From the NCBI GenBank assembly GCA_977030845.1, contig OZ365115.1, forward strand, positions 14,756,001 through 14,820,000: a DNA stretch of 64,000 nucleotides, written 5' to 3'. Position numbers and translations under genes: made by a program. The DNA comes from Fimbriosthenelais zetlandica. Its lineage: Eukaryota. Below are positions 1 to 55,690 of this stretch, one piece after another; position 1 is the stretch's first letter, and every line of letters begins with the position of its first letter. The notes beneath the pieces are model-generated. The model had not been told where the DNA came from. It was given only the letters and a program-made list of their open reading frames with translations, and searched no databases.

Positions 1-661
1 TCAGATAAGCTATAGGTTGCTTCTGTTATAAGTGAACTAATATTCCCGTACACTTGGTGAGATGACCAAGTGTTTTACCATCCTGGTGGTTCTAGTTAAA
101 AGCTTTGTGAGATGTTTTAATCTTGACTTTTATAGAATCACACGTCATTACCAAAGCTTTAGTCATTTAATTGTGAGCATTATAATTATAGAGAGCACTC
201 GTCTATAGAGAGTGAGAAGAGCGTCAATAGAATGAATTAATGACTAAAAGATATCAAAGTATTGTAAGGCAATCATGTCAAAACATGCAGGCAATGGTTG
301 GCAGCAATAGTCCAAATGACTTTATGCCGATTAGCAATCAAGAGCAGATGTTAAGCCTTTCCCCCACTGATGCGATTTGCCTTGCGACACATGTGTGGCA
401 GAGGTGAGGTGTCTATACCACGGAAAACTGCATCAGTGGTGGACCATCTTTAGGCCTTTGAAATATTAGAACTATTTTTTCGCTATAATTGCGAGGCACA
501 CCAGTTTGGGCGGCCTTGTAATAGTAAGTTAGGTCTCAGTTAGGCCTACAACTTGCCTTGTCGTATTAAAATATTATCAAAGTCAGAAAATGAGAATAAG
601 AGTTACACCAAGCTCCCAGAGATGTAAGATGGCAGATAGGTAGCGTTCATGAGGAGCTTAC

Positions 662-1018
662 CTGGAGCTGATGATGTTTTGGGTGAGGTGGGAACCATTA
701 TTACAGTATCCCTATTCCCTGTCTCTACCCATAAAGCATTGCTATGGTGGATGGCACTGGCCTCAGAACTGACCAACAACAGCTCGACATTAGAGCTACC
801 GGCGATTTTCTGTACGACTTGGTCGTGGGAGTCTCGTACGACTGATTCTCCGTTAACCTCAATGAGCTGGTCATTGTAGTTCATGTCAGCCTCGGCAGCG
901 GGAGTACCAGCTGTTATAGTGCCTATATAGTGACCAGGCTTCCCCTGAAGCTCATGAAGATCAAATCCATAGGTACCGTCAACCTTCTCAAGGTTGATGC
1001 GCCGAGGAGGGGAGCCCA
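662..1018 (-). CDS. PDZ exon 10 (357 nt)
   Basis: Acceptor ccaaacag|TG, donor CCAG|gtaagc. Encodes PPRRINLEKVDGTYGFDLHELQGKPGHYIG...SHDQVVQKIA. Confidence 0.88.
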
Positions 1019-4000
1019 CTGTTTGGTAAAGTTTTAAAAACCAAACATCACTTTTCACACAGTTACTTCCTTCTCATTGACAATTAAAATCATCCTTTCA
1101 CAATATATTCATAACCCAGTTATATTTGTATATTATTTTTTTAAATTGTTATATGACTTTCCTTTTATAATTAAATTATCAGCAGAATGTTTTTCCTTAT
1201 TAGTTGAACTGAGTAATATACTTTGGTATGCTTTATATTCATCTACATCATATTTATTTAAATTTCATCAGTTGTTTTTGGTTCATTTTAAAACCTCATT
1301 TACCAGTGTCCGTGCACTGAAAATTTATTTTTTAAATTGTTATATTGTTATTGATTGAGAAAAAATATTATGTTAGTATTGGAATGTATGAAGATCTCTC
1401 CTAGAGATTTGTGTTAATATTAAGGTGAATAAAATGCTATTGGGTTATATAGAATTAAAATATAAATAAATCTTGGTAAATAAGGGCAGTATTCGTAAAG
1501 AGCAGTTATTCAATCAATGGTCATGTAGCTATAATAAAAAATGTCCCATTCACCTCTGAAATATGCATATAAGTTGTTTTAGTGCGTATTGAATAGAAAA
1601 CAATTAGAAAAAATAACAAATGTGGAATGGAAAATAATGTCCAGGCTGACAAGTAATGATTTCATTCTTGGCTTCTTCATTTTGGGCAAATGGCACATGG
1701 ACATTGAAGCTTAACGATGGAGAGGTATTACTTTAAAGTCCTGCAGTAGTTTCAGCAATTCACAGTCCATCGCAGTGGGAGACATGGCTGGCTTTTTACA
1801 AGCCTCACCACAAACGGTGAGACATGGTTGGCCTTTTGCATGCATCTCACCACAGACAGTGGGGGACATGGCTGGTATTTTACATATCTCTAGCTTTTGA
1901 TATTCCAGTTAGCAGCACTGGATGAAGAAGGACAATGGCAAAATGTGGAGAATTAAATGTGGAATTAACTTTAAATTATAGTTAAGGTAGGATGAAGCAT
2001 GGATCAGTTAGTGGTCAGGGACGGTCATCATATTGAGGGTATATTAGTGAATGGTTGTAGTCCATTACCCCACACCTGGTTAACTAATCTACTATCAGAC
2101 CAACCTACCTCTAACCACTGAACCGTTCTCCTCACAGTGTTGCTCCTCAACCTCTACCATGCCTGAGTTTATATCTATCTCATTATATCTGAAGTGATCC
2201 AGCGACTTTTTGTCGACAACAAGAAGTGTGACCTGTGAAGGGTCCTGTCTTATCTTTTCCACCACTTCAGGGTGTTGGGCCTCTTGTACATTTGCCCCGT
2301 TTACTTCTATAATATAGTCATTCCTGTCCACGCCTACAGACGCGGCGGGAGAGCCGGGTTCCACTTTTCCTACCCGTGGTTCAGGTCTATGTTTAACTTC
2401 GTATAAGTCAAAGCCGTAGCCCTCAAAGTCAGGCCACTTCTTGAGGTGACAGAGTCGCGCGTGGGGCTTGCTGTTTTTAGGAAGTGTGCTATCACGACTG
2501 GCACTGGGGTGGGCTGAAGTAACATTTAATATATTCTAAAATTAAATTTAATCTCACTAAAACAGATTCTCCATGATCAACGGTGTTATCTTAAATTTAA
2601 ATTAAAATGTAAAATTTAAATTTATAACAAAGTAAGTTCACATACCATTACCTAGAAATGTACAAATTATTTTATGTATATAATTTAAAGACAAAACATC
2701 TTAAAAGTTATGTTTATAAAATGACCTGAAAATGAAACCATTAGAAAAGGAAAATATTAGTTTATGTTAATTTAATTTAAAGTTCTATGTTATAAATGTA
2801 AAATTTAAGGTTCAAAATGTTAGTGTAGAGAACTAAAATCATGCAGATAATAAGAGATGGGTTAGTAATATTTATTTTTTAATGATGGGTTTATAAATCT
2901 CATGTGGATAGATATTCCAGAGCGAGTTAAAAATAGATCCAGCGAAAATGTAGGCAATCGGTGAAAAAATGGTCCAAACTCCGCAAAATGTGCCAGCTCA
3001 ACTATGGTCAAACCTGGCATCAAGCTGTATGCGATATAAAAAGTGAGCGATTGATGAATGGAGATTAAGATCTTGCCTTCCACCTTTAGATACAAGCAGT
3101 CATGGATGAGCCTGACGTAGTCAGGTTTAGCAGGGATTATCGTGCTAATACAAGCTAATCTTACCCCTGGTGTTCACACTATTGGTAGGGATCAGGGTTG
3201 AGTACCCGCCATAATCCAGTCTGTCTCCAGACACGACTAATGTTAAGTCCTCGGGATGTTTTTTGATGTTTTTAGCCAAGTCCTCGTGAGGTGTGTTCTG
3301 GACGTTCACACCCTGTACCTCTATGATCTCCTCGCCCTGCTGGAGTCCAGCATGCTCGGCCGGGGAGTTAGCGTCCACTACGCCCACGTAGTGACCGGAC
3401 TTGTTCAGTAAACGGTGAAGCTCAAACCCGTAACTTTGACCCGGAGCGGCTCGGAGGTGACAGGTATGTACCCCGTCAGACTGTACACCTAGTGTGAGTG
3501 AGGCAAGAGTGAATATTGATTCCGGCTACAAGTTCTCGAGTAGGTCCTACCCTTCCCAAAAGTTTCTGTTACATGCGTCTCACCACAGACAGTGAGAGAC
3601 ATGGCTGCCTCTCACCACAGACAGTGAGAGACATGGCTGCCTCTCACCACAGACAGTGGGAGACATGGCTGGCCTTTTACACATCTCTCACCATAGACAG
3701 TGGATGACATGGCTGGTATTTTACATGCCTCGTACCACAGACAGTGAGACATGGCTGGCCTTTTACATGCCTCTCACCACAGACAGTGGGAGACATGGTT
3801 GGCCTTTTACACGTCTCTTACCACAGAGAGTAGGAGACATGGCTGGCTTTTGATATCCCAGTTAGCAGCACTGGGTGGAAAAGGACAATGGCAAATTTAA
3901 AGAATGCTTGGGGGAATTGAACCCGGGGTCTCCGGCATTCACACTGAGTATTAGATATGGAAAAGTGTCAGTAAGTTGCAACAGGGGAAGAGGGAATACA

Positions 4001-7000
4001 CGGAGGTGTAATCATCGTTTTAAAAATGTATTGTTAGCGTATTATGGAAGGGGGAGATATGACAGTCATCTCCATAAGGTTCCTTTGGAATGCAAGGGAT
4101 TTTAAGCACATGAAAGAATGTAACATGATCATTATGTCAGATGAATTCATCAGGAAATATAATTATAAGGATGAATATTTCTTTCACGATTTGACTTTTC
4201 AGTATACAACAGAAAAAAATAAATTGAATTTAAAGTGTATTGTATCCATAAGGATGTCGAATATCATCAAGTCATTATACCAACAACTATTTTATCTTTA
4301 AGTTTATATTAGATATTTAAGTTTATAAATATACAATATAGTTAACAGTTATAATTAAGTATTTAATATCCTATATTATATTAGGTGTCATTTATGACAG
4401 ATTAAAAGTCTGTCATAAATAAAGTGGAGTTCTAGATTAAATCTAGTTATTGTGAATCTAGTTAGGATCAATTTAAATCAATCAGTGAAGCCCATATTAG
4501 GTAATTAATTAATGTGATTAAAATTAATTTACTTCTGTGATTAAATAGTGTCAACTGTTATATCCGTTAACAAATCAAAATGATTAAATGCCGGACCGTG
4601 TCCAATTATTCCTCCATAAAAGATATTTCACTAAACCGTGAGAAACATTTTCTCAAAGCATTTTGTTCCAAATAGAGAGCAGATAAAACAGAACCAAATC
4701 ACCGGAAATCAAGGATAATCAGGTAAAGGAAAGACTAGAGAAATCTGAGAGAATGAAGTGATATAAAGATCCAAAGCTAAGATAATTCAATCAGTTGTGG
4801 TTGTGAATAATTATGAATCAATCTTGAAGTTGAAATGGATTCAATAAAATAAAATGAATTAATAAATGGGTGATAAATAATAATATACCCTTCACTAACA
4901 TTCTGAGTGAATGACTCAGCAAGTTTCAAAATCTGTGAGGCCACTTCCGCCACTAGCCCAGTGACTTCCGTGGAACAATTCATAAAATATATTCAGGATA
5001 ATCTGATAATCTGGGGGATAATTATTAAACAAACAAGACTCCATGAGACTTGATACTAATACTGTTATGAGCCTCACTACTAGTTTAAGGATCTTCTCTG
5101 ATGGTTTATCTATGGAGCTATCGGGAGCTATGTACTGATACTTCACAAGTCAAACTCTCAGCTATCTAAACCATCTAAAATACAGAAATCTCACCCCCAA
5201 CTTCAACTATTCTAACACCAAGTATAACTTTCCTAAAGCCTGGAAGGCTCTGAGTTGGAAATCTATCCGATCAAGCGACCCAATGACACGTTTGATAATA
5301 TAAGGCAATTCTTTACACTTAAAATTTCAAGAGCAATTCAGTATGACTCTAACAGGTCATTATATCTGGCTTTATATTACCCAACTGGGCAATGGGTCGT
5401 CCAATCGTATGGAAATCCTGATCAATGTGATCCAGACGTGACAACCTGCCCACAACTCTAGGTGAATCTAAGTCTGAGATCTGATTCATTTAGTGGCTTC
5501 TGCAACTAGAAAGCCCTTCTTGCATTGAATCTCTAACACTGAACCTGCCTAGTTTAAGCATTAGATGTTTAAGATCTACTGTCTGTAAGGCAGTATAAGC
5601 TAGCAGCTAGTCTGAGCGAGTGTTTGAGCTAGTCTAGATTATTATCAGCATCCATACTCTCTGTAGACTATTGCACTTTATTTACCTTTAAATTTAAGCA
5701 TCGGTAATTTAACCCTAGTTTAGAAGTCATTCAGATTCTGGGCCCAATGTCTGACTGCCCAGTGAGACATCTGAATGACATTAATATACTCTAATCATGT
5801 GCACGAAATACTGTCAAAATGTAGTTAGGTAAGTTCCATAACTATCACATAAGTTCTGTAACTGCACCCAAGATTCGCATTCTGGTAATCCACCTAGACA
5901 AGTTAAAAGGTCTACGGCAACCAGAAGCTGATAGGGCCTGTCGAGGGTGTCCAGATCATTTTGGATTCTGTAGGTCCAATTTAATAAAGGCTTAGTCTAC
6001 AGAAGGCATGGAAATAAAGCTGGCTAAGACAAGAGAGCATTCCCACCTATAACAGACCCCTTACCTGGTGTGGTATTTGAGTTAAGCATTGCTACTAGAG
6101 GCGTGATTCCATGTAGATGGAAGTACCGTGAAGCTGTCTTATCAACCACCATGAAGCTCATCTGGTTGCCTTGAGCTTTGATCAGTTCTACAGCGTCAGA
6201 GTGAGGTGTGTTCTGGATGTTAACACTGTTCACTTCTACCACCTCATCACCGATCAGAAGACCAGCATGAACAGCGGGTGATGGACGCTCCAGATCACCA
6301 ATAACATGACCAGGGAGGTCTTTATCATATTCAAGTTTAAAGCCGAAGCCGTGAGTGCTCGATGATCGCTGAAGTTCACAGATCCGAGGCGCGTGCTCAC
6401 CATCCACTGATCTGGTGCACTTTTGTTGGGACGTTACTTTGAATTTGTGAATCCAGAAAATTAATATTAGACTAAGTACATTGAAATTTAATTATGCGTA
6501 GAAATCTTCTTCAGGAAAGTATTTTTGAATGGGGTAACTCTACTAGGGATTTTCGCCCTGGGATTCTGTTAACTTTTCGCTTTGGGATTATGGTAACTTT
6601 TTGCCTTGGGATTATGTTTGCCTTGGGATTACAGTAACCTTTCATTGTAATTTTCTTCTAGACAGAAGGTCCCTGTCTTGGTAACCCAAGTTGTGCTGGC
6701 CTATAATAGCATCAATAGAAAGCACTGATTCAAAATCCCCAATTCCATGCATGACATAAAAGCATCATCAGCCAGAAAATGCTTCAGGAAAACTGTAATA
6801 AAATAGAGCAAGAATGGCGGAAATCCCTAGTGGAGTTACCCTAAAAGCAATAGCTCAGAATTATTTCTTCAATTACATAAGACTGAAAGAGATGATTAGT
6901 ATTATTCCAATTAATTATTACTCACTAGTTAATCTATGACTAAAACGTAGGAAAGTTATCTACGGCAGATTTAACCCTGTAAAACAATGATTAAAGTGCC

Positions 7001-10000
7001 CTAATCTAACCTATAAACCTGTTATTATTATCACACACACCCTAGTCAACCTCATGCAGAACTCAGGTCAGAAACTACTGGTGTTAACAGGGACCTCCAT
7101 AAATTAAAAAAATCTGATTTCAATTTTAATCTGTTGAGGTCAGGAGCAACTGTGCTCTCTTTGATCTGCTCCAGACCACCAAGAGAGGTAGGCCTACTTG
7201 TAGAACAGTCAATTGCTTGTCTGCTATGGGTGGCCATCTGATCTTTTGGCCCAATTTCAGAACCAATTCTCGTCCACTCAGTTTGCATAGACAATTGGTC
7301 GATACTTTGGAGGGAGCCCCTCATTGCAGATCCTTGGGACTCTGGTGTTCAAAACACCCCTTAATCTACCCATAGAGCTACAGTTCTATGGTCTACCTTC
7401 TCCAAAATCCTGGATCAGGATACAATCTTCAATATTTTATCCTATGGTTGTAAAATGGGGTCACTAGTTTAGTAAATAACACCAGACAAGACTTCATGTT
7501 ATCAGGTATCATGTCTTCCCCTGATTAAATCAATATAGATCTAATTAACCTAATTAACGGTGCTGGGTTACCTGGGAGTTAATCCCTGGTGGTTTAGTAT
7601 TAGTAAAGCCCGTGAACCGTGAGATAATCCGTCATGTATGTGGATTATAAGGATTACCTGGAGGTGACGTCACACTGTCCCTCACTTGGACGTTGTTGTT
7701 GGTAGTGTATGTCGATGACGCCTTGTCAATGACAAGTAAGGTCACTGACTGTGGATTGTTCTGGAACCTCTTGACCACTTCAATGTGGCTCTCCTCCTCC
7801 ACATTCTGGCCATTCACCTCCATTATCTCATCCCCGCTGGCCAGTCCAGCTTGCTGGGCTGGGGAGTCAGGGACGACATAGCTCACAAAGTGGCCCTTCT
7901 TATTACTCTCATCCTGCATGTCAAACCCATAGCCCTGATAGTCAGGGCGGGCCACAAGGGTACATAGACGGGCCACAGGAGGAGGGGTACTGTTCACTAC
8001 AGCCTCAGAGGTGGAGGCCACCATGGCAGAGCCATTGACGCTGGCTGAACCATTGGTTACTACGCCTGTCAGAGAAAATCATACGGGCATCTTCATCAAG
8101 TGTTACTATCATTAAATATACTGTAAATCTAAAGTGCTTTATGTATCAAACAAGGTATCAACTACTCTTATCTGGCTCCTATATATAATACGTCAAATAA
8201 AATACGAAAAATACATGTATACGACTAATTCTGCACATGACATATAGACTGATAGAAATGCCTTCAAGCCAAATAATTGGCAAAAGATATAAAATATATG
8301 AATGAAGTCAAGGGGCACCACAATGATTTTGAACAGCAAGTGAAAATATCCAAATCAAGAAGAGTGGATTGAGACTGAGAGAAGCACACACATGGATGGC
8401 CTATGTCTATCATGATCTAATCTAGGATCCTCTATGTCTACTATATCTACCACCAGCCCTTACCTGGAGCGGCCTGCGTGGGGCATTCTATGTAATCTAT
8501 ATTGTCCATCCGGCCGTGGACCCATATAGAGTTGTTATTGTAATACTCCTCGGCTACACTGTCTACCACCAGTAGCTTCACTTCGTTAGGGTTCTCCAAT
8601 ATTCTCTCCACTACTCTCTTGTGCGGTTCTTCCAGCACGTTATGGTAGTTCACTTCTATGATTTTATCATCTCGTCTCATGGCCACAGCGTCTGATGGTG
8701 AACCTCTATCGATAGAACCTATCAAATGTCCCGGACGGCTCTTCTCCTCGTGAAGGTCAAAGCCGTAACCTTGGAAGGTGGGCCATTTCTTGAGGTGGTA
8801 GAGACGGGGTCTAGGAGCTAGCCAACAATGAAGGAAACAATCAAAATACATTCACAAGAAACAACTTCAGTTGAGAAGATTTTACAATAAGTACCAAATA
8901 TGGCACATATCGTAAGGAAAGTACAGTAAAAAGAAAATTGTTTTGGAAGAAGAATTAGAGAAGCCACTGCGATGGAAGCTGCATGTGAGGAGAAGCAGGG
9001 ACTGTATAAGGTGTAAGGCCTCCTTATCATGGAAGACCGGATCATTTATAAAATAATTTATTTAAAAAACTCCTACTGGTTTAAAATACTAAGAGATGGG
9101 TGCCACATAGGTGCACAACATGCAGTATGATTAAACTGTTAATTAGCCCAGGATGAATGGGCAAAACTTGTTAGAATGTTGACGATAAGTATTTTAAACA
9201 AATATTCCTAGTAATATTTCACATTAACAAAGAATCAAAAACTGATGTTCATTAAAGAAAAAGATTATTAAAAATCAAAATCCCCTTGATTATTATGGTT
9301 AGCAACATAGTATTCTACCATGAAATCAAATTATTTTCCACTGCAAATAAAAAATTTGTGGGGTTTTGAGTTGATTTTTGGATGAATGGCGCTGGGGGTG
9401 GGCTTGTTTTTTTGGGGGCGGGGTAGTCTTACCTTTATAATTAGACGCGGGACATTCTATTTCCTCTATGTTGGGCATCTTGCTATGGACCCATACCGCC
9501 CGCTCCTTATAAAACTGATCACCTTCCATGTCCAGTACCAGTAGACTGACCCTGTCACTGAACTGTCTGATTTTTTCCACCACCTGTTGGTGGGTATAGT
9601 CCAGCACATTACGGCCGTTAACTTCAATGATCTTGTCATCTAGACGGAGTCCGGTTACAGCCCCGGGGGACCCCGCATCCAGGGATCCCACCAAATGCCC
9701 GGGGTGCTTCAGCCGCTCGTGAAGATCAAAGCCATAGCCGCTAAAGTTGGGCCATTTTTTCAGGTGAATAAGACGCGGCCGCGGCATACCAACTGGGGAG
9801 TAAAAGCTAACATGATAAGGTACTCTTCACGGGCTCTCATAGACCTGGTATACCAACACAACTATCAAAACCTACTACTGACAAACCACAGGGAAAAGTA
9901 GGCAGTGGAAAACCGACTGCTGACAAACCACAGGGCAATGTAGGCAGTGGGAAGGGCTAAAAAGCTACCAATCAAGGGGCACTGAGAACATCAGGTACAT

Positions 10001-13000
10001 TCTACACGGGTTAACTAAAGGCCGATCTCCACTGATGCGATTTTACTTTCAACAATACTGCGATAAAGTGATGTTTGTCTTGCAATAAAATTTAAAAGTT
10101 TTAGTTAAGCTGACCAAGGCGTTGTGGCCATCCTCAAGTGGATTTTTTTATTTTCATTGCGACAAGCATCACCTTTGTCGCAATAGTGTAGCAAGCAAAA
10201 TCGCAGCAGTGGAGTACAGGCTTGCGACAATGGAGGAACGACTTGGAGGAATCACCAAAAACAAAGCCAAAATACGATGACAATTCACTACAGGGGTTTA
10301 AAACAGGGAAGTCTACTCTCACGGGGGTTGGGGGTAATTATAAACATGCCAAAACATTACAAATCACACTCCATTCACTGCCAAGGCTTCCAAGGCTGGC
10401 CATTGATCCAAGATTAATCATGAAAAATAATTAAATCAAATAAAACCCAAGTGTTACTTTATGATAGTAGATGAGTGGAGCACCAAGGGCAGGTTAGTCC
10501 TAGGTCTATATCGGGTATGTAGATGTAGAGTGATTTTAGAGGTTTTAGAGTATTTTAGAGGTTCTATATGATCTACCCACCACCTAACCCACGTCTGGAA
10601 CCCATTTCCCAGACATCCCAGTGAATCCAAAGCAAGGATACCATCCTTGTCCAAAGCAATGCTTGTAATAGGTACATTTCCCATGTGTTAAGTGCACAAA
10701 ATGTGTGACCTATTATACAAGAATACAGTTTAAATCACTATGATATATTGTAATGCAACTCAAGCGCATTGAGTTAGTTTTAGTCATGTAACATGTGTTG
10801 AAATGTAATATGTCCTGATTGCTCTACATGGATAGAAGTCGTATATAAGTGTATTACAAATTATGTTTGTTCTTGGCCGATTCGTTACATACAGTGTATT
10901 TTAAGGCCACGTTATGAATTAGAAAACTTAATTAGCTCGGTATGTAAAAGCTGTTACCAAAAGTACAACTTAAGGTTCTTTGAAGCCTATGACCCTCAGG
11001 ATAGCAAGTGCATTATTCTGTATCTGTTATGTAAATAATTATACTGTGAGAAACGAGCGGTATATATAATGAGTGTTATCATGCCATCTTGGGGTTTAAT
11101 GAGCCCAATATAATCACGCAACCATGCGGACAGTTACATAAAATATTACTAGATCACTACATTCTCATACTTTCTTAGATTCCAAGTTCCCTGAAAACAC
11201 TTGTATACTTCCAATGGAAGTACATTCTCTGCAGTCAAAGATTTGGCTGCCAGGCCTTGTAGCAGAACAAGAACTGTCAATGACCTGGAAGACGTACTCG
11301 CGTGTGTAACAGTGAAGGACTTCCATGTTCAAAGCCATGACAGTGATCTCTTCCGACCGTTCACAAAAATATTCTGGTATATATTGATTCAGATTCTTCT
11401 TTACTGAAACCTTTAAAATTCCAGATTATTTCTTTTAGAATCAAAAGGCCTGAGATCAGACATGTGAAGAGATGGTAGCAAAGATTCTTAAAGATCAGAG
11501 ATGAATGATCTAGCTTTTTTTTAGTTAGAATTTTTATAGAGCCTGTAATGGGTGAATACCAGCTCAGACTCTTGATTACTCAAGTTTCTCGTATAATTTT
11601 CAGCTGGGGGATCTTTCTATGTGCATTACTACATTGCCTTCTGTGTAATGGATATTTCTAGGTGCATGTGCTCTATGTACACCAACACCCTGAGGAAGGA
11701 GGCATTAGAAATGCCTTGGACAGCTCGGGGGATTTGAACCGCCGACCCTTCGATCATTGGTCCACCACCCTGTGTGAGCTGGCGCTCTAACCAACTGAGC
11801 TAACTCCGCTCCCCAATAAAGATGTGAGCATCACGTTCCTAAAATAGCCACAGAATAGGTTCTGCTCATTTTCACAGACTGACTGATTAGAATGAACTCC
11901 CTGAAAAATCCTCCCATCAGTCTCCAGCCTTCCCATGATGTTCTCTCTCCCATAAAGCAGTTTTTATCAGCTGGCTTTGTAGTTGAAGTCAACATGGCAG
12001 TACAAAGGTAGAACGCAGTGTAACTCAGCCATGCATGTGTGGGCTAGGATCGTGATGTAGAGAGACAGGCATCATCTCTATACCCAGTCAGGCCTGAATG
12101 GGGGCTAGCATGCCTGGCCGTCTAATATCAAATATCTAATATTCCCTTTGTCTTCTTATTCAAGGGTTGAAAGGGGAAAAGCGGCTTGTTGGTCGATTGG
12201 GAATTATTGCCTCAACGAGGAAACACTCTGTTAGCTATATGGACTGCTCCTACTGGTTGGCAGCAATGTTCTTTGCTACATATATATATGGTGGGAGATA
12301 TAGCTGGCCATTTACATACCTCTCACTACAGTAGGAGACATGGCTGAGCTTTTAAATGCCTCTAACCACAGACAGTTGGAGATATTGCTGGTCTTTTACA
12401 TGCGTCACGACACCGACAGTGGGAATCATGGTGGGCCTTTTATTACCCAGTTAGCAGGACAAATGGCAAATAATGAGGCTGTCTGGGGAATTGAACCAGG
12501 GACCTCCTGCATTCAAGTCAAACACTCTGCCACCTGAGCCTTACCACCCACAAGGGTTAAGACTACAGACAATAAATAATTTAAAAGGCAATATAAATAT
12601 AGCACAAAGTCTATGTTTACAGTACCAAACACTGGGTCTTTTTTTCCCCGAGGTTCTCACCGACATTCTCATGATTAATTAAGCCATTAAAAACCCTTGA
12701 GAAAATTAAAAATCTTCATGAGGAAAAGGTGCATATTTATAAGGCAAATCTGTATTTTGTTCATGGGAAACAGGAAGAGCATTCTTCCAGATGGTATCAC
12801 ATATTTCGTAGAGGAAATCATTTTTTACTTTGGTCTGAGAAGTCCCTTAAAGGAGGAAAAATAAACCAGTGGAAAAACAAGTAGTATAAGGAGAATTCCT
12901 GGCATGTTGAAGAACCCTTAAAGCAGTGTTGGGAATGTGTGGAGCTAGCCAGGTCTTCCTCCCTCTCATCTCCTTGAAAATACAAGCACTACATGAGCAG

Positions 13001-16000: not shown

Positions 16001-19000
16001 GCAATACCAGGTTGACTTGTTTACCTAGTCAACTCAGGTTACATTCAATGTTAGAAGACATGTTGGTGGATATAGAATGAGGAACAGTATCCTGGCCCAA
16101 TCCATGCATAGAGAAGAAACGCCTCAATGCACAGACGAAATGCTCTCGGACAAATACATTGACCCAGGAAAAGTGAAATGGGAGGGCAGGTTCTACCGAA
16201 TATTCATTCTCTCCTCATTTTCATAGACCACTTGGCAGAATTTTCACACAGAAATATTGACAAGTAGCCTAGATAGTTCATATGTTCAAGTGTATACTTT
16301 CCAGTGAATAGAAGGTGCACTGAATTTATTATGTAATTGGTGAGTGTATATATGCTGAAGCAATCCGAGTCCAGTGAAACTGAATACTGATTTAACATTT
16401 TTTTAATTGAAAAAAGTATATATTGTAGACGCGTTGAAAAGTATCAGTCAAAAGTCTGATTACATTTTAGTCCTGTATTTTAGTGCTCAAACATAAGTCG
16501 AAGTTTTGAGTTCCATGTAGTCAATTACAGTACTAGTACTAGTCCGGAATATTTTAGTACTGTATTAGAGTACCAAAATACAGTACTGTACCATGTATGA
16601 CTACAGCACTCAAGTAGATACTGTATGTAATAGACTTTAATAGAAGTATCAGTATGTTAAGATGGACCATTGTCCCGGCGCTAGGCTAGCTTCAGGGCTA
16701 GAATATTGACATACATGTAAACGAGTATAGAGATGGTAAAATCAACCATTGTATGGCGCACTCTAATCCTCGGGGTATAGTATGTGAGGATCCAGATTAC
16801 CTGTACCTGGATTACCACCAGATTAACATACATCTACACCTGCCAAATCACAGGTAATATACGCCAAGTCCTATATGTACATCTGCTGCCATATCAGCAT
16901 CAGCAGGTTAGAAAATAGAAAATAAAGGAAGGAAAATGGTTATATAATACACAAATCAAGTAAAAGCATGGTGAGAGAGCGAGAGATAGGATAGAGAGAG
17001 AGGGGGAGATATGATAGAGAGAGAGGGGGAGATAGGATAGAGAGAGAGAGGGAAGAGATAGAGTAGTTTTGAGATACAGAGTGGGAGTGAGATAGAGAGT
17101 CAAAATGAGTGAGAGCGACAGATAGTGAGGGTGACTGAGAGTGAGAGACAGAGATAGAGATAGTAAGACAGAGATAGAAATAGTGAGACAGAGACAGTGA
17201 GAGAGATACCGAAGTGACAGACAGTGAGAGATACAGGAGAGACAGAAACAGAGATAGACAGGGACAGGAAAAAGTATTGAGGGCGGCTGAATCTGAGATT
17301 CTGAGACAGCCACAGAGAAACAGACAGTGATAAAGTGAGAGAGATTCTGAGAGAGACAGATAGAGTGACCCTGCCAGGATAACCAGCCTGGACTTTGAAA
17401 TAAGAAACTTAAGCCTAAAGTCCTTAAAGCTAGGGGCTGCTGTACACATTGTGTGCCTTGACCAGGCAGGGCAGCTTGATGCTATAACTTACCATTACTG
17501 ATGGCCTCGTCAGGACAGGTAATAGTGACCACACTGGACAGCTGACCACTCATCTTCACCCCCTTTGTCTTGTAGTATTCGGCGTCCGCTGGCTTGACCA
17601 GTAAGAGTTTCACATGATCTTGGTGAGCTATGATTTTGGTGACGACCGTTTTGTGATCCACTTCAGCCACATCCTCCCCATTGACTTCAATGATAAAATC
17701 ACCTTTGAGGACTCCAGCGGCTTCAGCTGGGGAGCTGGGGTCCACGCCCCCGATGAAGTTCCCTACACGACCCTTCTCAGCGTTTAGGTTGAAGCCGTAA
17801 CCTTTGAAACTGGCCCATTTCTTGAGGTGGCACAGACGGAGGGCAGGAGCATCATCATCAACATCATCATTGGTTGAGGCGGCAGGAGCAACTGTAGCAT
17901 TTAGGAATGCATGGATATTTAGTAAGTAATTCATGGGAAATTAATACAGATTTAGGAGAGAAAATAAGAGAAAAGTCCATGAAAGTAGGGGAGGGGTCGG
18001 GGCTGATGAACTGGCTTGAAGTGGGTTTAAAACATTGCAGTGAATGCTGACATTCACAAGAAGCCTTATTTTGATACAGTAAATGTTTAAGATCACTGGA
18101 GCCATCGCACTTGGGTGTTGACAAGACAAAATAGTTTACAACACCATGCCAATACATTACATACATTAAGTGCAGAGTCCAACCTCCGTTATATTCAAAA
18201 GTGCAGCATTCAGGCTTCAGCCCTGGAGCTAGGGCTTTCATTCCATCCAAAGCCTGGGGTTAATTTGAATTTGAATCTTAACTGACTAAACAGTTAGCTT
18301 GTGTTAGTACTCTATGACCGTTATTCAACAGACAGGAAATGTTTGAATGCTTTACATGCAATATGTTCATAATTACAAACATTTCTGAAACAGATATTTG
18401 ATTAGTTTTGGGGGAAAATCACCATGGATTAACCATTATGATCTAAGGTACAAAGGTGATTTAACTTGTAGGGTATTAATATCCAAAACCCTTTAATCCA
18501 GGGGAGGTAACTTGCATTAAAAATGCACACCTTGTCACCAGAAAACCCAGGTAGTGCAGGGAGTAGGGTACAGGGATGGGGTTACCCACAGGGTTCCTTA
18601 CACCAGGGAAAAACCAGGTTCCACAGTAGCTTAACAAGAACACAGAGGTACACCCAAGGGTTGTGTGTGATCCAGGGGAACCAGGGGCTGTTTCATAATT
18701 ATGTCATGGTTTATGAAACGCGCCCCAAGGCCTGTTTCATAATAGACTTACGACGGATTATAAAACAGACCCAAAGGAATCAAAGGGTTGGGTTTATATT
18801 TACAGAGTTCCTTAAATGTATATAGCTCGACTAGGAGGTAAAGATTCAGCTCAAAGAGCTAATAAAAAATGTTCAATCAGTAGGAAACTGGGTAGCAGGT
18901 CAATGAGCTAATGTACAATGCTCAATCAGTGGGTGAATCCATATCAGGAGCAGCTCAGCGCTAATATACAGAGCTGAATCAGGTGTGATGATCCATTGGT

Positions 19001-22000
19001 CTTGATTGGTGAACGGTAAGCAATTGACCTTTTCCAGATAGTCTTAATTGATGATAGGGCCTACAGGTAACCTTAACTGATTACAGGTAGACTTAACGAT
19101 GATAACAGGTAGACTTAGCTGTTGATTACAGGTGTTGTACAGGTATCTTACAGGTGTTAACCTTACCTTCAGGCGCCTCATCAGGACACTCAATCCTCTC
19201 TACATTCTCCATGTCGCTGTGTATTTTAATACTCTTGTCCTGGTAGTATTTGGCCGTGTCGTCGTCCACCACCAGCATGGTCACTCGGCCGGGGGTTGCC
19301 TTGATTTTCTGTACCACCTGAGGGTGTGTATCCTCATACACGTTACTACCATTAACCTCCACCATCTTGTCCCCCGCCTGCAGCCCCCCAGCCTGGGCGG
19401 GGGAATCCTCGTCCACCCCACCTATAAAGTGACCCTCGGTATTTTTAGAGGCCTGGAGGTTGAAGCCGTAACCTCTGAATGAGCTCCATGTCTTGATGAT
19501 GCAGAGACGTGGACGTGGTGCCTCATCATCAATCTCAGCAACAACGGCCGCAACAATGCTCGCAACAGCTACAGCTTCCATTGGAGTAACAACGGCAGGT
19601 TCCTCGTCAACATCGTCAGTGCCATCAGCAACGTCGTAAAGGGCGGCTTTTTCTAATTCGTCAATGGCTTCAGCTTCCTCGTCTTTTGGATCAGGAGCGT
19701 CCTGGACTTCCGGTTCCGGTTCAGATTGGCGGGCTGGGGTTTCATCCTCCTCGTCATCAGGGAGGGGAGCATCTGGTACGGGTGGTGGGGTGGATTCTAT
19801 ATAAAATATCACCCTCTGTTAGCTGACTTAACTAGACTATATCATTATATTATCCCACTGATATATCATCAGTTATCTTATAACAGTTTTAAATATCAAT
19901 ACTTGGAAATCAGTAAGTAAGAGTTTATAAATTCCTCATGGCATTATGTTATAGATTGCACAGATGTCTTGTCCTGTAAAGGTAGGCTTAACTAGGAATG
20001 GATCAATGGGACTTGTCCATCTTAATCACATTAAGGTTGGATAAAGCTGGGGGTTATTTCTAAGTTTATACTATAGTCTACTGTATAATTGAAATTTCTG
20101 TACATAGGTGTTCTAGGTTTCTATCTCTGAACACATATACACACCCCCCTGAGGAGGGAGCCAGGGGAAATTTATTTGACAGCTCGGCGATAGAACTGTC
20201 CACTCAAGGGCAACTCCTTCCCTGACAAAGTCATACATGGGAAGTTTGCGACAACATTTAACAATTTAGATATGGTCGCAAACCTATGTGACACTATAGG
20301 GTCGCTAGTCCCAGAGGAAAAAGTCACAAAACAGAGTCGCAATTAATGGTTTGTGACTCAGAGTCATTGGATTTCTACCAAAAGTAAGAGGAATCTTGAT
20401 TAAAAACATGTAAATGGGGTCTACCATCCACATGCTGGACCAGCGCCAGTCAGGATCTGGCTGACCTACATCTCCAGCCGACCATGAAATGATCTTATTT
20501 CTCTAACTCTGTACATGCTTAGATGAGAAGGGGCGGGGGGGGGGGGGGGGTGGGGGATGGGATGGGGGATGGGGAGAGGATAGTATGGCAATTTAGCCCT
20601 AGTTTGGCCATGAATCAAAACTAGAGGTGACTGGCCACAACACTAATTCATTCTCATTCTCTAGACTCTCAATGTATACTAGCCCCATCCCAAACCCCAC
20701 CGACAGATGATGTAAGATGTTACAGACAAAATCAGTCAGATCATGGGATGAGTTAACAAGCGCCATTAATTATCAGATCTAGACCTGATTGTCTTAATCA
20801 TCAGACGGTTCCATCAGACGGTATGGCTGATGGGTTCGAAAACCGATCAAAAATCGGTTCAAAAATCTGATGATCGGTTTGTGTCGGCTGGGGTATGTAT
20901 GGATTTAAATCTTATTTCTGCATGTCTCTCTCGATCTAGGAGTCTATAGAACATTTTATGTTCAACACACCAATACCGTGAGGGGGGGGGGGGCAGGGCA
21001 GTGAAAAAGCCTTGGACAGCTCGGGGATTGAACCGCCAAACCTTCGATCATTGGTAAAGCCCGAGTGAGCAGCATCAACTGAGCTAACTCAAGAGTCCCT
21101 CCGACTCCTTGAGAACTAATTAAGGAGTGGTTCAGGGAAAGGGGAGGGGATGGGAATATAACTGAGTGGAGTTTATTTGTATTAAGAACTGCGCAGCAAG
21201 TCCACTTTTTCTCTGGACTATAATCACTTCTCACCCAGCATTTTGGCATCCTCCATGAAAACAACCATTGTTGAGATATACTCTTCTCATGGCCTGGCTG
21301 CCTTTTTATATTAACAACTATTTTTTTGTATTTTAACGAGTTCTGGACTCTGGTATAAGTGATTCACGACTGCAGGCCGACCACCGGAGCATGGTAGAAA
21401 CTTTTGTATAAGTTTCCGTTCCCGGAGCTTCTTAATAAACAATATCCTGAAGGCACAAACACTTATTATCATTTAAGTAACTCTCTTTGTGGTCTTCAAG
21501 AAAAATATGTAAAAAAGCATAGCAAAAACAGAGCATATTGCGTTCCTAAGTCCAGTTAGAATTGCCTGGGAGACATAGAGTTCAGAAATATGACAAGAAT
21601 GGTACCACAAGACTTGCTTGGGATTTTTCTTTAAATTAAAGATATTGATTACGAAAGGAGAGCCTAGTAGTGTCTGGAATCATTGTATAAACAGCCTGAA
21701 GCAAGTCTAATTCCAGGTAATAGACTGGCGAGAGATAATACCAACCACTCATACTAATCAATACCATCAAGGACCACTAGAAATATTAAATTTCCAGACA
21801 TAATCTAAGTGGTTTGAAATAATCCGAATATTCTGAACCTAAGGTTGGATCAGACTGCGAACGCCTCCAGTTGCTTGCGTTTTTCTTGTCATGCGACTTC
21901 AGCAAGAAGCCAGCCGATTAGTTTTTCTAATCGAGTCGCAGAGGCTTGATTTTTGTCGCATGCTCTCTCGGATAGCAGTGCACAAAGACACAGAGCAAGG

Positions 22001-25000: not shown

Positions 25001-26629
25001 ATGCCATGGTAACATTGATAGTAAAGTAACCTTGGTAACTCCTAGTAACAATGGTAACATTGGTGTAACAACCGTAACCTAGGTAACATTGCTGTAACCT
25101 TGTTAACGGAATTAAACGTTGTTACTTGTTGATAATGGTAACAATGAACCAGTGTAACCTTGTAACAATGTAACCGTGGTAACAGTGTTAATCACGGTAA
25201 CTCTAACCATGGTAGTATATAAGTAACCGTGATCTTACCTCGTGAGTTACGTTCCGGCGTTTCTCCTCGGATCACGTTGGCCATGTCGCTGCGTACCACC
25301 GTACCTCGTTGCTTGTAGTAACTATCCGCGTCCTTGTCGAGCACCAATAAGGTAACTGTCTCACGGTTAGACTTAATCCTCGTCACCACATCCTGGTGGG
25401 ACTCCTCCAGTACGTTCACGTCGTTAACCTCTATAATGCGGTCACCCTCCAGTAGCCCCGCCGTGGACGCCGGGGAGTCCGTGTCCACCTTACCTATAAA
25501 CTGACCAGGCCGGTTCTTCTCGGCCGTTAGGTTAAAGCCGTATCCCGTAAAGTCAGACCAGAGGTGGAGGATACAGAGACGCGGGCTGGGCTCCGAGTCT
25601 GGTTCTGAAACGAGACGAAAAAACAAGGTGAGAAAGAGATTTAAGGATGGATAGAGGAAAAAATAGTGAGAAAGAGATCTATGGATGGCTATGAGAGGAA
25701 AAGATGGTGAGAGAAAGATGTAGATGAGCTAATCCATGAAATCGTCGCCTTTGGTAAAAAAAAAATGGATGATTTTTCATATTGATAATAGGCCTATGTG
25801 TTACAATGATATAGAGCTGGAGGACTATTCAGGACATGTGAGGGCTGGGGGAGACAGGTGAGGGCTGGAGGTACTGGAGTCAACTCAGTTAGGACACCAG
25901 CTTATTCAGAGAAACCAATTTCATTATGATCAAAGGGTCACTGGTTCAATCCCCGAACCGTCTAAGACATTTCCTTGTAAACTTTAGGGGTTCAATTTAG
26001 GATATGATGCCACCCATGCACGGGAATATGAAATTCAAAAAAGCCAGACAAACATTTCCCATTAGATATGGCTGTTCTCAGAAATGACCTTTGGCCTGGG
26101 GACCTAGAAACACCGGCTTTAGTCTGGAAATTCCAATGGTAAAGGTATGCTATTCCGTAGCTCCCCACCCCCTCTCACGATCTTCTACGATCAGGTTTTG
26201 TTAAATCAAAGTATTTGATCTTTGAAATATGGCAAAATATAGCATCCGTATAAGGGAATCCTTTAGCCTGATACACTAATCCGATTCTCTATCCGGCTCC
26301 ATATGATAGCTGTCTGATACTATATTTCTATTCACACAAACTCCTTGTAATTTGAAGTCTGTTACACCTAAGCAAGGTCACTGACACTATCGTTGGATAT
26401 GACACTAGGAATATCCATAAGAGTAACCGCTGACAAACTTTCAATCATTGGATGCCATTAGAAATGGGAGATGGGATGGCGACGGGTTAGATAATCGGAT
26501 TAGTGTGTGGGGACTTTAAAGCTTGATAAATGCTCGGGTGAATGATCTATAATTATGGTGGTATGAGTCCATAATTACAGGTGTGATGATGCACACATCC
26601 AGGTAATGGTCAATATGATTACCTCCCAT
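662..26629 (-). CDS. Multi-PDZ scaffold of the NHERF/PDZK1 family; at least 10 PDZ domains, 11 coding exons in window, 3' end beyond the left edge
   Basis: Ten ORF segments match the NHERF-type PDZ pattern PRLC-x-L-x(n)-GYGF-x-L...SPA-x2-AGL-x2-GD-x-IIEVNG-x-NV-x4-H-x2-VV-x2-I...V-x-LLVVD. All have AG/GT boundaries in phase 1. Joined to ATG GGA G at 26629-26623 they give one open frame of about 3,980 nt. Orthology to a specific NHERF paralogue cannot be assigned. Confidence 0.88.
1767..1955 (-). mobile_element. 44-bp-minisatellite SINE-like copy
   Basis: Three decayed units plus the gatattccagttagcagcactgg core. Confidence 0.7.
2109..2513 (-). CDS. PDZ exon 9 (405 nt)
   Basis: Acceptor gttacttcag|CC, donor AGAG|gtaggt. 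Manual translation gives KPHARLCHLKKWPDFEGYGFDLYEVKHRPEPRVGKVEPGSPAASVG...QHPEVVEKIR. Confidence 0.9.
3165..3488 (-). CDS. PDZ exon 8 (324 nt)
   Basis: Acceptor ctcacactag|GT, donor AGGG|gtaaga. Manual translation upstream of the listed ORF gives VQSDGVHTCHLRAAPGQSYGFELHRLLNKSGHYVGVVDANSPAEHAGL...PHEDLAKNIK. Confidence 0.85.
3569..3948 (-). mobile_element. tRNA-headed SINE-like element with 44-bp minisatellite tail (7 units)
   Basis: Tandem cagacagtgggagacatggctggccttttacatgcctctcacca, then gatatcccagttagcagcactgg, then gggaattgaaccc (Pol III B box GGTTCAATTCC on the minus strand). Confidence 0.75.
6065..6436 (-). CDS. PDZ exon 7 (372 nt; 342 nt if the acceptor before 6406 is used)
   Basis: Donor CCAG|gtaagg is clear. 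There are two in-frame phase-1 acceptors: ttcaaag|TA (start 6436, first AG after a CTAAT branch-like motif) and gatcag|TG (start 6406). Encodes APRICELQRSSSTHGFGFKLEYD...PHSDAVELIK. Confidence 0.8.
6532..6841. mobile_element. MITE-like element with about 26-bp terminal inverted repeats
   Basis: gggtaactctactagggattttcgcc ... ggcggaaatccctagtggagttaccc, with internal gggatt sub-repeats. No clear TSD. Confidence 0.65.
7658..8065 (-). CDS. PDZ exon 6 (408 nt)
   Basis: Acceptor ttttctctgacag|GC, donor CCAG|gtaatc. Encodes VARLCTLVARPDYQGYGFDMQDE...SHIEVVKRF. Confidence 0.88.
8464..8817 (-). CDS. PDZ exon 5 (354 nt)
   Basis: Acceptor gttggctag|CT, donor CCAG|gtaagg. Encodes PRPRLYHLKKWPTFQGYGFDLHEE...PHKRVVERIL...DYIECP. 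Confidence 0.9.
9433..9792 (-). CDS. PDZ exon 4 (360 nt)
   Basis: Acceptor ttttactccccag|TT, donor AAAG|gtaaga. Encodes PRPRLIHLKKWPNFSGYGFDLHE...THQQVVEKIR...EEIECP. Confidence 0.9.
11650..11814 (-). mobile_element. Second tRNA-derived SINE family (tRNA-Ile-like head)
   Basis: Minus strand GTTAGCTCAGTTGGTTAGAGCG (A box/D arm)...GGTTCAAATCC (B box), continuing into GAGCTGTCCAAGGC. Related copies at about 20090-20200(-), 20930-21090(-), 25877-25975(+), 28450-28600(+), 36110-36230(+) and 41640-41730(-). Confidence 0.72.
12290..12548 (-). mobile_element. Same SINE-like family; copy with the most complete tRNA-like head
   Basis: Minus strand GGTGGTAAGGCTCAGGTGGCAGAGTGTTTGACTTGAATGCAGGAGGTCCCTGGTTCAATTCCCCAGACAGCC has A- and B-box-like motifs and is followed by decayed 44-bp units. 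Confidence 0.72.
13592..16398 (-). mobile_element. Possible highly decayed L1/Tx1-like LINE remnants
   Basis: Minus-strand fragments in the expected order: ...MNYLGYL... near 16.3 kb, then DWSQLW...FYVMDRVVHTR...SPCIYFG near 13.8 kb, resembling the L1/Tx1 ORF2 C-terminus. Weak pattern recall only. Confidence 0.25.
16965..17360. repeat. Degenerate GA-rich simple repeat
   Basis: Long (GA/GACA/GATA)-type tract. Similar polypurine/polypyrimidine tracts at about 29545-29800, 43070-43800, 47530-47830, 56010-56200, 57770-58140 and 61520-61690. Confidence 0.85.
17493..17891 (-). CDS. PDZ exon 3 (399 nt)
   Basis: Acceptor gctacag|TT, donor AATG|gtaagt. Encodes LRLCHLKKWASFKGYGFNLNAEK...DHKTVVTKII...TITCP. 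Confidence 0.9.
19167..19796 (-). CDS. Acidic/Pro-rich linker plus PDZ exon 2 (630 nt)
   Basis: Acceptor tttatatag|AA, donor GAAG|gtaagg. Encodes an acidic linker, then PRPRLCIIKTWSSFRGYGFNLQASK...HPQVVQKIK...ERIECP. Confidence 0.9.
23014..23071. promoter_or_regulatory. Intronic RFX X-box plus CTCF-like motif
   Basis: GTTACCATGGCAAC (23014-23027) and CCGCCAGAGGGCGC (23058-23071) in a small GC-rich island. Confidence 0.5.
25239..25604 (-). CDS. PDZ exon 1 (366 nt)
   Basis: Acceptor tcgtttcag|AA, donor CGAG|gtaaga. Encodes SPRLCILHLWSDFTGYGFNLTAEKNRPGQFIGKVDTDSPASTAGLLEGDRIIEVNDVNVLEESHQDVVTRIKS. Confidence 0.92.
26623..26629 (-). CDS. Predicted first coding exon (ATG GGA G, 7 coding nt)
   Basis: Minus strand reads GCATC-ATG-GGA-G|GTAATC: Kozak-like context (A at -3, G at +4), a phase-1 donor, and in-frame TAG TAG 12 codons upstream. 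Splicing to 25604 gives MGEPDSEPSPRLC. Confidence 0.62.
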
Positions 26630-27569: not shown

Positions 27570-27830
27570 TTTAGCCTTTTACATGCCTCTCACCAGTGAC
27601 CACAGACAGTGGGAGACATGGCTGGCCTTTTACATGCCTCTCACCAGTGACCACAGACAGTGGGAGACATGGCTGGCCTTTTACATGCCTCTCACCACAG
27701 ACAGTGGGAGACATGGCTGGTCTTTTACATGCGTCTCACCACAGAGAGCTGGCCTTTTACATGCCTCTCACCAGTGACCACAGAGAGTGGGAGACATGGC
27801 TGGGCTTTGATATCCCAGTTAGCAGCACTT
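27570..27830 (-). mobile_element. 44-bp-minisatellite SINE-like copy (some units carry a 7-bp insertion)
   Basis: Tandem units, several reading ctcaccagtgaccacag, ending in gatatcccagttagcagcact. Confidence 0.72.
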
Positions 27831-33870: not shown

Positions 33871-34025
33871 TCAGACAGTGGGAGACATGACTGGCTTTTT
33901 ACATGCCTCTCACCACAGACAGTGGGAGACATGGCTGGCCTTTTACATGCCTCTCACCACAGACAGTGGGAGACATGACTGGCTTTTTACTTTTTTGATA
34001 TCCCAGTTAGCAGCACTGGGTGGGC
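33871..34025 (-). mobile_element. 44-bp-minisatellite SINE-like copy
   Basis: Units start at 33872, 33916 and 33960 (period 44), followed by the core sequence. Confidence 0.75.
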
Positions 34026-55439: not shown

Positions 55440-55690
55440 TTTTTGCCACAGACAGTGGGAGACATGGCAGGCCTTTTACATGCTTCTCGCCATAGACAGT
55501 GGGAGACCTGTCTGGTATTTTATATGCCTCTCACCACAGACAGTGGGAGACATGGCTGGCCTTTTACCTGCCTCTCACCAGACAGTGGCAGACATGGCTG
55601 GCCTTTTACTAGTTACAGAATGCTTGGGGAATTGAACCCTGGACCTCTAACATTCTGGTTGAACACTACCATCAGAGCCAGGGCCAGATA
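55440..55690 (-). mobile_element. 44-bp-minisatellite SINE-like copy
   Basis: Four units, then gaatgcttggggaattgaaccc (B box on the minus strand). Confidence 0.7.

What the first reader, a model, noticed from the sequence alone, without database searches (positions are those of the whole stretch)
662..26629. NHERF-type scaffold with at least ten PDZ domains, one per symmetric phase-1 exon
Seen: ten complete NHERF-type PDZ domains, each on its own exon (366, 630, 399, 360, 354, 408, 372/342, 324, 405 and 357 nt). All lengths are multiples of 3 and all introns are phase 1. There are no stops or frameshifts, and the frame continues past the window edge. Established: NHERF1/2 have two PDZ domains and PDZK1/PDZD3 have four; the 10-13-PDZ scaffolds (PATJ, MPDZ) are a different family with an L27 domain. 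Inference: this is a lineage-specific giant NHERF built by exon duplication. Symmetric exons mean any subset can be skipped in frame, so the locus could encode many scaffold variants. I cannot confirm it is absent from databases.
Basis: partly seen in the sequence, partly recalled or inferred. Interest (0 to 1): 0.86.

Follow-up and report, generated by a model that had tools for sequence, protein, structure and literature searches.

The report
Ten-PDZ NHERF-type scaffold gene

Summary
Ten PDZ domains lie on the minus strand between 662 and 25604, each on one exon. With a putative 7-nt start exon at 26629-26623, the joined frame is 1327 aa with no stop and stays open at the last donor (662).

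All ten domains are NHERF-type by PDB profile search, domain tree and a predicted fold. They are not MPDZ/PATJ-type.

"Lineage-specific" is only partly supported:
- The copies are old: 29-56% amino-acid identity, at most 74% DNA identity.
- An AU test rejects all ten forming one clade (p 0.009).
- Domains 3 and 10 have one-to-one orthologues in a 5-PDZ transcript of another species.

The size is rare but not unique. Priapulus caudatus LOC106807044 is annotated with 10-11 such PDZ domains plus a C-terminal tail that resembles the NHERF ezrin-binding tail by eye. Its predicted isoforms differ by exactly one PDZ module each.

No RNA runs were listed for this genome. One gene, expression and cassette skipping are therefore inferred, not shown. 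The 3' end lies outside the window.

The scan had noted exons 4-10 of this stretch before (s1-196167).

Verdict: real, a new member of a known kind, modest interest.

The parts
26623..26629 (-). Putative first coding exon ATGGGAG (Met-Gly plus the first base of Glu) followed by a GT donor, phase 1
   Evidence: Sequence read and joined frame. A at -3 and G at +4 around the ATG. The model begins MGE, like the Priapulus protein P0008/P0171. The PDZ1 exon has no in-frame ATG upstream of the domain. Inferred, not shown by RNA.
25239..25604 (-). Exon with PDZ 1 (366 nt, phase 1-1), GYGF loop
   Evidence: Pfam PDZ E 1.6e-12; splice sites; closest to the first PDZ of NHERF proteins (60% to Caligus NHERF d1, 57% to P0173 d1).
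19167..19796 (-). Exon with a ~95-aa acidic Asp/Glu/Pro-rich linker followed by PDZ 2 (630 nt, phase 1-1)
   Evidence: Pfam PDZ E 2.8e-13; translation; acceptor tatatag|AAT and donor AAG|gtaagg.
17493..17891 (-). Exon with PDZ 3 (399 nt, phase 1-1)
   Evidence: Pfam PDZ E 8.5e-11. Sister to domain 3 of transcript protein P0011 with 99% support; 52% identity.
9433..9792 (-). Exon with PDZ 4 (360 nt, phase 1-1)
   Evidence: Pfam PDZ E 8e-11; 56% identical to PDZ 5, the closest pair in the array.
8464..8817 (-). Exon with PDZ 5 (354 nt, phase 1-1)
   Evidence: Pfam PDZ E 1.8e-7. AlphaFold2 model pLDDT 96.9 shows a PDZ core, an extra helix (residues 86-94) and an extra strand. Best fold matches are the extended NHERF1 PDZ2 structures 2kjd and 6rqr.
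7658..8065 (-). Exon with PDZ 6 (408 nt, phase 1-1), Ser/Asn/Val-rich leader
   Evidence: Pfam PDZ E 2.5e-15; splice sites.
6065..6436 (-). Exon with PDZ 7 (372 nt; a second phase-1 acceptor at 6406 would give 342 nt), GFGF loop
   Evidence: Pfam PDZ E 2e-10. Both acceptors are weak. The most divergent domain (29-40% to the others).
3165..3488 (-). Exon with PDZ 8 (324 nt, phase 1-1), SYGF loop; PDZ core only, without the C-terminal extension
   Evidence: Pfam PDZ E 5.2e-11 covering 7-80 of 81 profile positions. It matches only positions 12-92 of the array's own profile.
2109..2513 (-). Exon with PDZ 9 (405 nt, phase 1-1)
   Evidence: Pfam PDZ E 9.4e-11; splice sites.
662..1018 (-). Exon with PDZ 10 (357 nt, phase 1-1), TYGF loop; last exon inside the window, frame still open at its donor
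   Evidence: Pfam PDZ E 3.8e-12. Sister to domain 4 of P0011 with 99% support; 53% identity over 121 aa including the end of the exon. In P0011 a further PDZ follows at the same point.

Best explanation
One protein-coding gene on the minus strand encodes a cytoplasmic scaffold of the NHERF family (NHERF1/2, PDZK1, PDZD3). It carries at least ten tandem class-I PDZ domains, each on its own phase-1/phase-1 exon, and its 3' part lies beyond the left edge of the window.

Shown here:
- The ten exons and their splice phases.
- The uninterrupted 1327-aa frame.
- The NHERF type of every domain.
- Conservation in all ten of the carboxylate-binding loop (x-Tyr/Phe-Gly-Phe) and of the first-helix histidine.

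From established PDZ knowledge (not tested here), that histidine marks binders of C-terminal Ser/Thr-x-hydrophobic tails.

Inferred: by analogy with vertebrate NHERF proteins, the product probably clusters transporters, channels and receptors under the plasma membrane, with up to ten or more clients per molecule. The array grew by repeated tandem duplication of a symmetric PDZ exon, over a long time rather than in one recent burst. Because all exons are symmetric, skipping any of them keeps the frame, so isoforms of different valency are possible.
For: - Pfam PDZ on all ten exons. An own-profile scan finds ten and only ten in the window.
- Canonical phase-1 splice sites and a stop-free joined frame.
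- Invariant Gly-Phe of the loop and invariant His across the ten.
- A PDB profile search puts NHERF1, 2, 3 and 4 in the 38 best places, bar one whole-protein DLG4 hit at rank 30, at E 5e-33 to 9e-19. The other PDZ families start at about E 2e-16.
- Score per domain against the array profile: NHERF and PDZK1 references 73-136 bits, MPDZ/PATJ 16-34 bits.
- In the tree all ten sit in the NHERF clade, split from MPDZ/PATJ with 99% support.
- The AlphaFold2 model of domain 5 has pLDDT 96.9, and its 40 best fold matches are all NHERF1-4 domains.
- One-gene argument: the complete transcript-derived protein P0011 (locus L003) joins orthologues of exon 3 and exon 10 in one reading frame, at the positions of the window's exon borders. 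No exon has its own start or stop.
- Precedent: the Priapulus protein P0008/P0171 has 10-11 such domains in one model, and its isoforms differ by one whole module.
- Related genomic contigs L001 and L002 show the same layout of one PDZ per exon, with phase-1 sites most clearly in L001.
Against: - No RNA evidence for this genome: no sequencing run was listed, and a junction 24-mer was absent from metagenome contigs.
- The start exon is a guess resting on a Kozak-like context and the shared MGE start.
- The 7.7-kb and 5.4-kb introns could hide a second promoter or an alternative last exon. A full ten-domain isoform is therefore not proven.
- The nearest specific orthologue (P0011) has only five PDZ domains and joins the domain-3-like module directly to the domain-10-like one. 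Exons 4-9 may be optional or rarely used.
- The 3' end is missing, so an ezrin-binding tail cannot be checked.
- Ligands and location are by analogy only.
Confidence: 0.75

Rival explanations
1. Two or more neighbouring genes rather than one. For example, a short gene made of exons 1-3 and a second gene made of exons 4-10 plus exons outside the window, each with unseen first or last exons in the long introns.
For: The intron between exons 3 and 4 is 7.7 kb, against 0.4-2.6 kb for the others downstream. Symmetric phases mean the frame cannot tell one gene from two. An earlier reading treated exons 4-10 as their own cluster (s1-196167), and a clade of domains 4-10 is not rejected (AU p 0.12). 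Most NHERF-like proteins in the databases have 2-4 domains.
Against: The transcript protein P0011 of another species joins the orthologue of exon 3 to the orthologue of exon 10. This places exons 4-9 inside one transcription unit. No PDZ exon has an in-frame ATG before the domain or a stop before its donor. No other coding matches were found in the introns.
Confidence: 0.12
2. A conserved five- or six-domain core gene (exons 1, 2, 3, 10 and those beyond the window). Exons 4-9 would be rarely used or decaying duplicates that are seldom or never included in mRNA.
For: P0011 has five domains and skips from the domain-3-like module to the domain-10-like one. Related contigs carry 5 and 6 PDZ exons. 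Exon 7 has weak acceptors, and exon 8 lacks the C-terminal extension.
Against: Exons 4-9 all keep open frames, strong phase-1 donors, the binding loop and the key histidine, despite divergence to 31-56% identity. This fits long-term purifying selection, not decay. P0011 may simply come from a species without these copies.
Confidence: 0.13

Closest known systems
NHERF1/EBP50 and NHERF2 (SLC9A3R1/2), two-PDZ ezrin-binding scaffolds
   Same: The PDZ sequence type is the same: the best PDB hits are NHERF1 PDZ1 and PDZ2 at E 5e-33 to 1e-30. The fold includes the helical extension after the PDZ core (2kjd, 6rqr, 2m0t). A short N-terminus precedes PDZ1. The class-I binding residues are kept.
   Different: At least ten domains instead of two. 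The ezrin-binding tail (Pfam EBP50_C, seen in references P0177 and P0143) cannot be checked because the 3' end is outside the window.
PDZK1 (NHERF3) and PDZD3 (NHERF4), four-PDZ scaffolds
   Same: PDZ-only tandem architecture of the same domain clade. Automatic names of the nearest named invertebrate hits are 'NHE-RF3-like'.
   Different: Four domains against ten or more. Identity to human PDZK1 domains is 30-46%. No one-to-one domain orthology was seen.
Priapulus caudatus LOC106807044 (XP_014664751.1 and isoforms; 'uncharacterized protein')
   Same: It has 10-11 NHERF-type extended PDZ domains in one predicted protein that also starts MGE. Its predicted isoforms differ by exactly one PDZ module. 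It is the only other protein in the returned list with 10 or more domains scoring at NHERF level.
   Different: It comes from another phylum, with about 31% identity overall. Five of its domains form their own starred clade, so much of its expansion was independent. By eye, its C-terminal tail resembles the end of the NHERF ezrin-binding tail, but it did not reach the Pfam EBP50_C threshold.
MPDZ/MUPP1 and PATJ/INADL, 10-13-PDZ polarity scaffolds
   Same: A similar number of PDZ domains in one polypeptide.
   Different: Those proteins carry an N-terminal L27 domain (P0099 and P0127). Their PDZ domains score only 16-34 bits against this array's profile and form a separate clade at 99% support.
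Tunicate tetraspanin-multi-PDZ proteins (Ciona LOC100179724, Clavelina, Oikopleura) and rotifer 7-9-PDZ proteins
   Same: They hold many PDZ domains of the wider NHERF clade.
   Different: The tunicate proteins carry an N-terminal tetraspanin domain, and no such match exists in the window. Their per-domain scores are lower, at 45-62 bits.

Membership tests
NHERF family (NHERF1-4) | PDZ domains of the NHERF sequence type | tested here: met
   The PDB profile search places NHERF1-4 in the 38 best positions, bar one whole-protein DLG4 hit at rank 30. All ten domains fall in the NHERF clade, split from MPDZ/PATJ at 99% support. Named database hits are all NHE-RF1/2/3 or PDZK1.
NHERF family (NHERF1-4) | Extended PDZ fold with a helical segment after the core | tested here: met
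   The AlphaFold2 model of domain 5 (pLDDT 96.9) has helix 86-94. Its best matches are the extended NHERF1 PDZ2 and PDZ1 structures. The array profile aligns through position about 120 in domains 1-5, 7, 9 and 10, and to 112 in domain 6. Domain 8 lacks the extension.
NHERF family (NHERF1-4) | Class-I ligand-binding residues (Gly-Tyr/Phe-Gly-Phe-type loop, His at the start of the second helix) | tested here: met
   Gly and Phe of the loop and the His are invariant in the ten-domain alignment. Binding itself was not tested.
NHERF family (NHERF1-4) | Two (NHERF1/2) or four (PDZK1, PDZD3) PDZ domains | tested here: not met
   At least ten domains. The references show 2 and 4. This is a difference of size, not of domain type.
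NHERF1/2 subgroup | C-terminal ezrin/radixin/moesin-binding tail (Pfam EBP50_C) | not testable with these tools
   The gene runs off the window at coordinate 1, and no flanking sequence is available. The nearest specific orthologue, P0011, ends without such a tail.
MPDZ/PATJ family | N-terminal L27 domain | tested here: not met
   The model has about 10 residues before PDZ1. The Pfam scan of the exon open frames found PDZ-type families only, with no L27, and no other coding match lies upstream. References P0099 and P0127 do carry L27_2.
MPDZ/PATJ family | PDZ domains orthologous to those of MPDZ/PATJ | tested here: not met
   Separate clade at 99% support; 16-34 bits against 78-178 bits for the window's own domains.

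The most novel reading that the evidence does not exclude
The locus is a combinatorial scaffold. Regulated skipping of the symmetric PDZ cassette exons, most plausibly exons 4-9, would give a family of isoforms with different valency and client sets from one gene. In this way, cell types could tune which membrane proteins are clustered together. Two observations point this way: the 5-PDZ orthologue transcript that joins module 3 directly to module 10, and the one-module differences between Priapulus isoforms.
Probability: 0.3. Interest if true: 0.5.

Novelty: new member of a known kind. Interest (0 to 1): 0.3.

Why it matters
NHERF scaffolds organise transporters and receptors at apical membranes. 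They are studied almost only as two- or four-PDZ vertebrate proteins. This gene and its Priapulus counterpart show that the family can reach ten or more domains through repeated duplication of one symmetric exon.

That makes it a natural test case for two questions: how scaffold valency evolves, and whether cassette splicing is used to vary it. The practical value is modest. It is a clean gene model for annotation and a candidate for long-read isoform profiling. No new mechanism is implied.

Tried and rejected
- RNA support was sought twice with the look-up of sequencing runs (a 3.9-kb stretch with four exons, and exon 2 alone). None was listed (one search did not complete), so read laying could not be used.
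- An exact 24-mer across the exon 4/exon 5 junction was not found in metagenome contigs.
- A word-based protein search with exon 2 found only short fragments at 58% identity or less. No same-species protein is in the collections.
- Fetching the Priapulus locus to read its exon phases failed because neither isoform is the one on record.
- Rfam found nothing in the window.
- The organism could not be identified. The retrotransposon fragment gave only broad invertebrate hits.
- I considered and rejected an MPDZ/PATJ relation.
- I considered and rejected a tetraspanin fusion like the tunicate proteins.
- I considered and rejected a pseudogene array, because all frames and key residues are intact.
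- I considered and rejected N-myristoylation of the Met-Gly start. From memory of the PROSITE pattern, Glu after the Gly does not fit; this was not tested.
- Three literature searches found no description of a giant NHERF.
Full report
**What is there.**
The window is eukaryotic DNA of about 40% G+C with no gaps. Ten open frames on the minus strand between 606 and 25728 each contain a PDZ domain. Pfam PF00595 matches all ten at E 2e-7 to 3e-15, above the gathering score.

A profile built from these domains was run with all filters off against the six-frame translation of the whole window. It finds these ten and nothing else; the next hit has E 0.29. tblastn with three multi-PDZ relatives also matches only these exons and nothing beyond 27 kb.

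**Exon structure.**
Each open frame is bounded by an AG acceptor and a GT donor in phase 1. The donors are strong (mostly G|GTAAG) and lie just before the first stop.

The exons are:
- 25604..25239
- 19796..19167
- 17891..17493
- 9792..9433
- 8817..8464
- 8065..7658
- 6436..6065 (a second phase-1 acceptor lies at 6406)
- 3488..3165
- 2513..2109
- 1018..662

A candidate first coding exon, ATGGGAG|gt, lies at 26629..26623 and has A at -3 and G at +4. Joined to it, the exons give 1327 codons without a stop, and the frame is still open at the donor at 662.

The start exon remains a guess. Its only outside support is that the model begins MGE, like the Priapulus protein. The PDZ1 open frame also has no in-frame ATG before the domain.

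**Domain type.**
- A profile of the ten domains searched against all PDB sequences puts NHERF1, NHERF2, PDZK1/NHERF3 and PDZD3/NHERF4 in the 38 best positions, apart from one whole-protein DLG4 hit at rank 30. These score E 5e-33 to 9e-19, and the other families begin near E 2e-16.
- The best hit, the extended NHERF1 PDZ1 (2m0t), aligns through profile position 120. This covers the segment after the PDZ core.
- An AlphaFold2 model of domain 5 (pLDDT 96.9) shows the PDZ core plus an extra helix and strand.
- Its 40 best Foldseek matches in the PDB are all NHERF1-4 domains, led by the extended NHERF1 PDZ2 (2kjd, 6rqr).
- Against the array's own profile, NHERF and PDZK1 references score 73-136 bits per domain. 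L27-bearing MPDZ-like and PATJ-like references score 16-34 bits.
- In a maximum-likelihood tree of 96 domains, all ten window domains fall in the NHERF clade. A branch with 99% SH-aLRT support separates this clade from MPDZ/PATJ.
- The Gly-Phe of the carboxylate-binding loop and the His at the start of the second helix are invariant across the ten. From established PDZ knowledge, that His marks class-I binders of Ser/Thr-x-hydrophobic tails.

**One gene or several.**
The phases cannot decide this, because every subset of exons is in frame.

The best evidence is comparative. P0011 is an 842-aa complete reading frame on a 3.3-kb intronless Logan contig, so it is transcript-derived (L003). It has five PDZ domains. 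Its third and fourth domains are sisters of window domains 3 and 10 with 99% support, at 52-53% identity, and the match runs to the very end of exon 10.

In that transcript the two modules are joined at the position of the window's exon borders, and a further PDZ follows. Exons 3 and 10 therefore belong to one transcription unit in a relative, and exons 4-9 lie inside it on the same strand and in the same phase.

By the same orthology, the window's gene probably continues with at least one more PDZ exon to the left. No RNA data could be obtained for this genome. A full ten-domain isoform is thus inferred, not shown.

**History of the array.**
Identity between the ten domains is 29-56%, and the closest pair is the adjacent domains 4 and 5. 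DNA similarity between exons is at most 74% over about 100 nt. The duplications are therefore old.

An AU test rejects the tree in which all ten window domains form one clade (p 0.009). A clade of domains 4-10 is not rejected (p 0.12). Domain 1 is closest to the first PDZ of NHERF proteins from other phyla (54-60%). 'Built by exon duplication' therefore stands, but 'lineage-specific' holds at most for part of the array.

**Relatives and precedent.**
The exhaustive profile search of 1.84 billion representatives returned one protein with ten high-scoring domains, P0008. This is Priapulus caudatus LOC106807044 isoform X5, and isoform X2 has eleven.

- Five of the Priapulus domains form their own starred clade, so its expansion was largely independent.
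- Its C-terminus, like those of the 7-PDZ P0173 and the 6-7-PDZ P0009, resembles by eye the end of the copepod and fish NHERF tails. It did not reach Pfam EBP50_C at E 0.01.
- The three Priapulus isoforms are identical except for blocks of 125 and 132 aa, each one whole PDZ module, plus one single-residue difference. This is what skipping a symmetric cassette exon would give, though these are predicted models.
- Among retrieved proteins with NHERF-level scores per domain, nearly all have 2-4 domains, two have 5, one has 6 and one has 7. Only the Priapulus isoforms have 10-11.
- Looser relatives with 7-9 domains occur in tunicates, where they are fused to a tetraspanin domain, and in rotifers.
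- Two genomic contigs from ENA assemblies carry arrays of 5 and 6 PDZ exons of this type, with phase-1 sites most clearly in L001.
- No paper describing a giant NHERF was found.

**Likely working.**
Shown: the coding capacity for a tandem array of ten intact NHERF-type class-I PDZ domains. Most linkers are short, and a ~95-aa acidic linker sits in exon 2.

Inferred from the vertebrate family: the product would be a cytoplasmic scaffold under the plasma membrane. It would bind the C-terminal tails of transporters, channels and receptors, with higher valency than NHERF1/2 or PDZK1. Whether it links to ezrin-type proteins depends on a tail that would lie outside the window. Variable valency through cassette skipping is possible and has a predicted precedent, but it is untested.

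**Verdict.**
This is a large new member of a known scaffold family. The one public counterpart of similar size is uncharacterised.

Noticed in passing
window 3574-3851, 27574-27745, 33872-33990, 55446-55609, 62273-62562 (also 1819-1944, 12335-12460): A 44-nt minisatellite (unit about GCCTTTTACATGCCTCTCACCACAGACAGTGGGAGACATGGCTG) is dispersed at seven or more sites. Three of these lie in introns of the PDZ gene. It creates spurious open frames with the peptide QTVGDMAGLLHASHH. It is probably part of a mobile element.
   Followed up: partly
window 34978-35796 (-): A 272-aa open frame resembles the C-terminal part of non-LTR retrotransposon reverse transcriptases (protein atlas hits with RVT_1). 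It is likely a truncated element.
   Followed up: partly
window 606-661 (-): If the donor at 662 were not used, the frame would read on for 19 codons and end in Ser-Leu-Val. That ending has the form of a class-I PDZ ligand. A retained-intron isoform could then carry a tail able to bind its own domains, as NHERF1's tail does. This is speculation from the sequence alone.
   Followed up: no
window exon ends, e.g. 19177-19200, 9443-9466, 8474-8497 (-): Domains 2, 3, 4, 5 and 9 carry a conserved Cys near the end of the exon, in an Ile-Glu-Cys-Pro-like motif (Thr-Cys-Pro in domain 3, His-Cys-Glu in domain 9). Several domains of P0173 share it, while Priapulus has Leu-Glu-Thr-Pro there. In the model of domain 5 this segment forms an extra strand. 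Its role is unknown.
   Followed up: no
window 42001-44000: Strong purine/pyrimidine strand asymmetry (GC skew 0.43, AT skew 0.24). On the minus strand it reads as Ser/Leu/Pro-rich low-complexity frames. Similar AG-rich tracts lie at 16900-17450, inside the intron between exons 3 and 4.
   Followed up: no
L002:7511-8689: In a related contig, two PDZ domains lie in one uninterrupted open frame. This may mean an intron was lost between two cassette exons, or that a short in-frame intron is present.
   Followed up: partly
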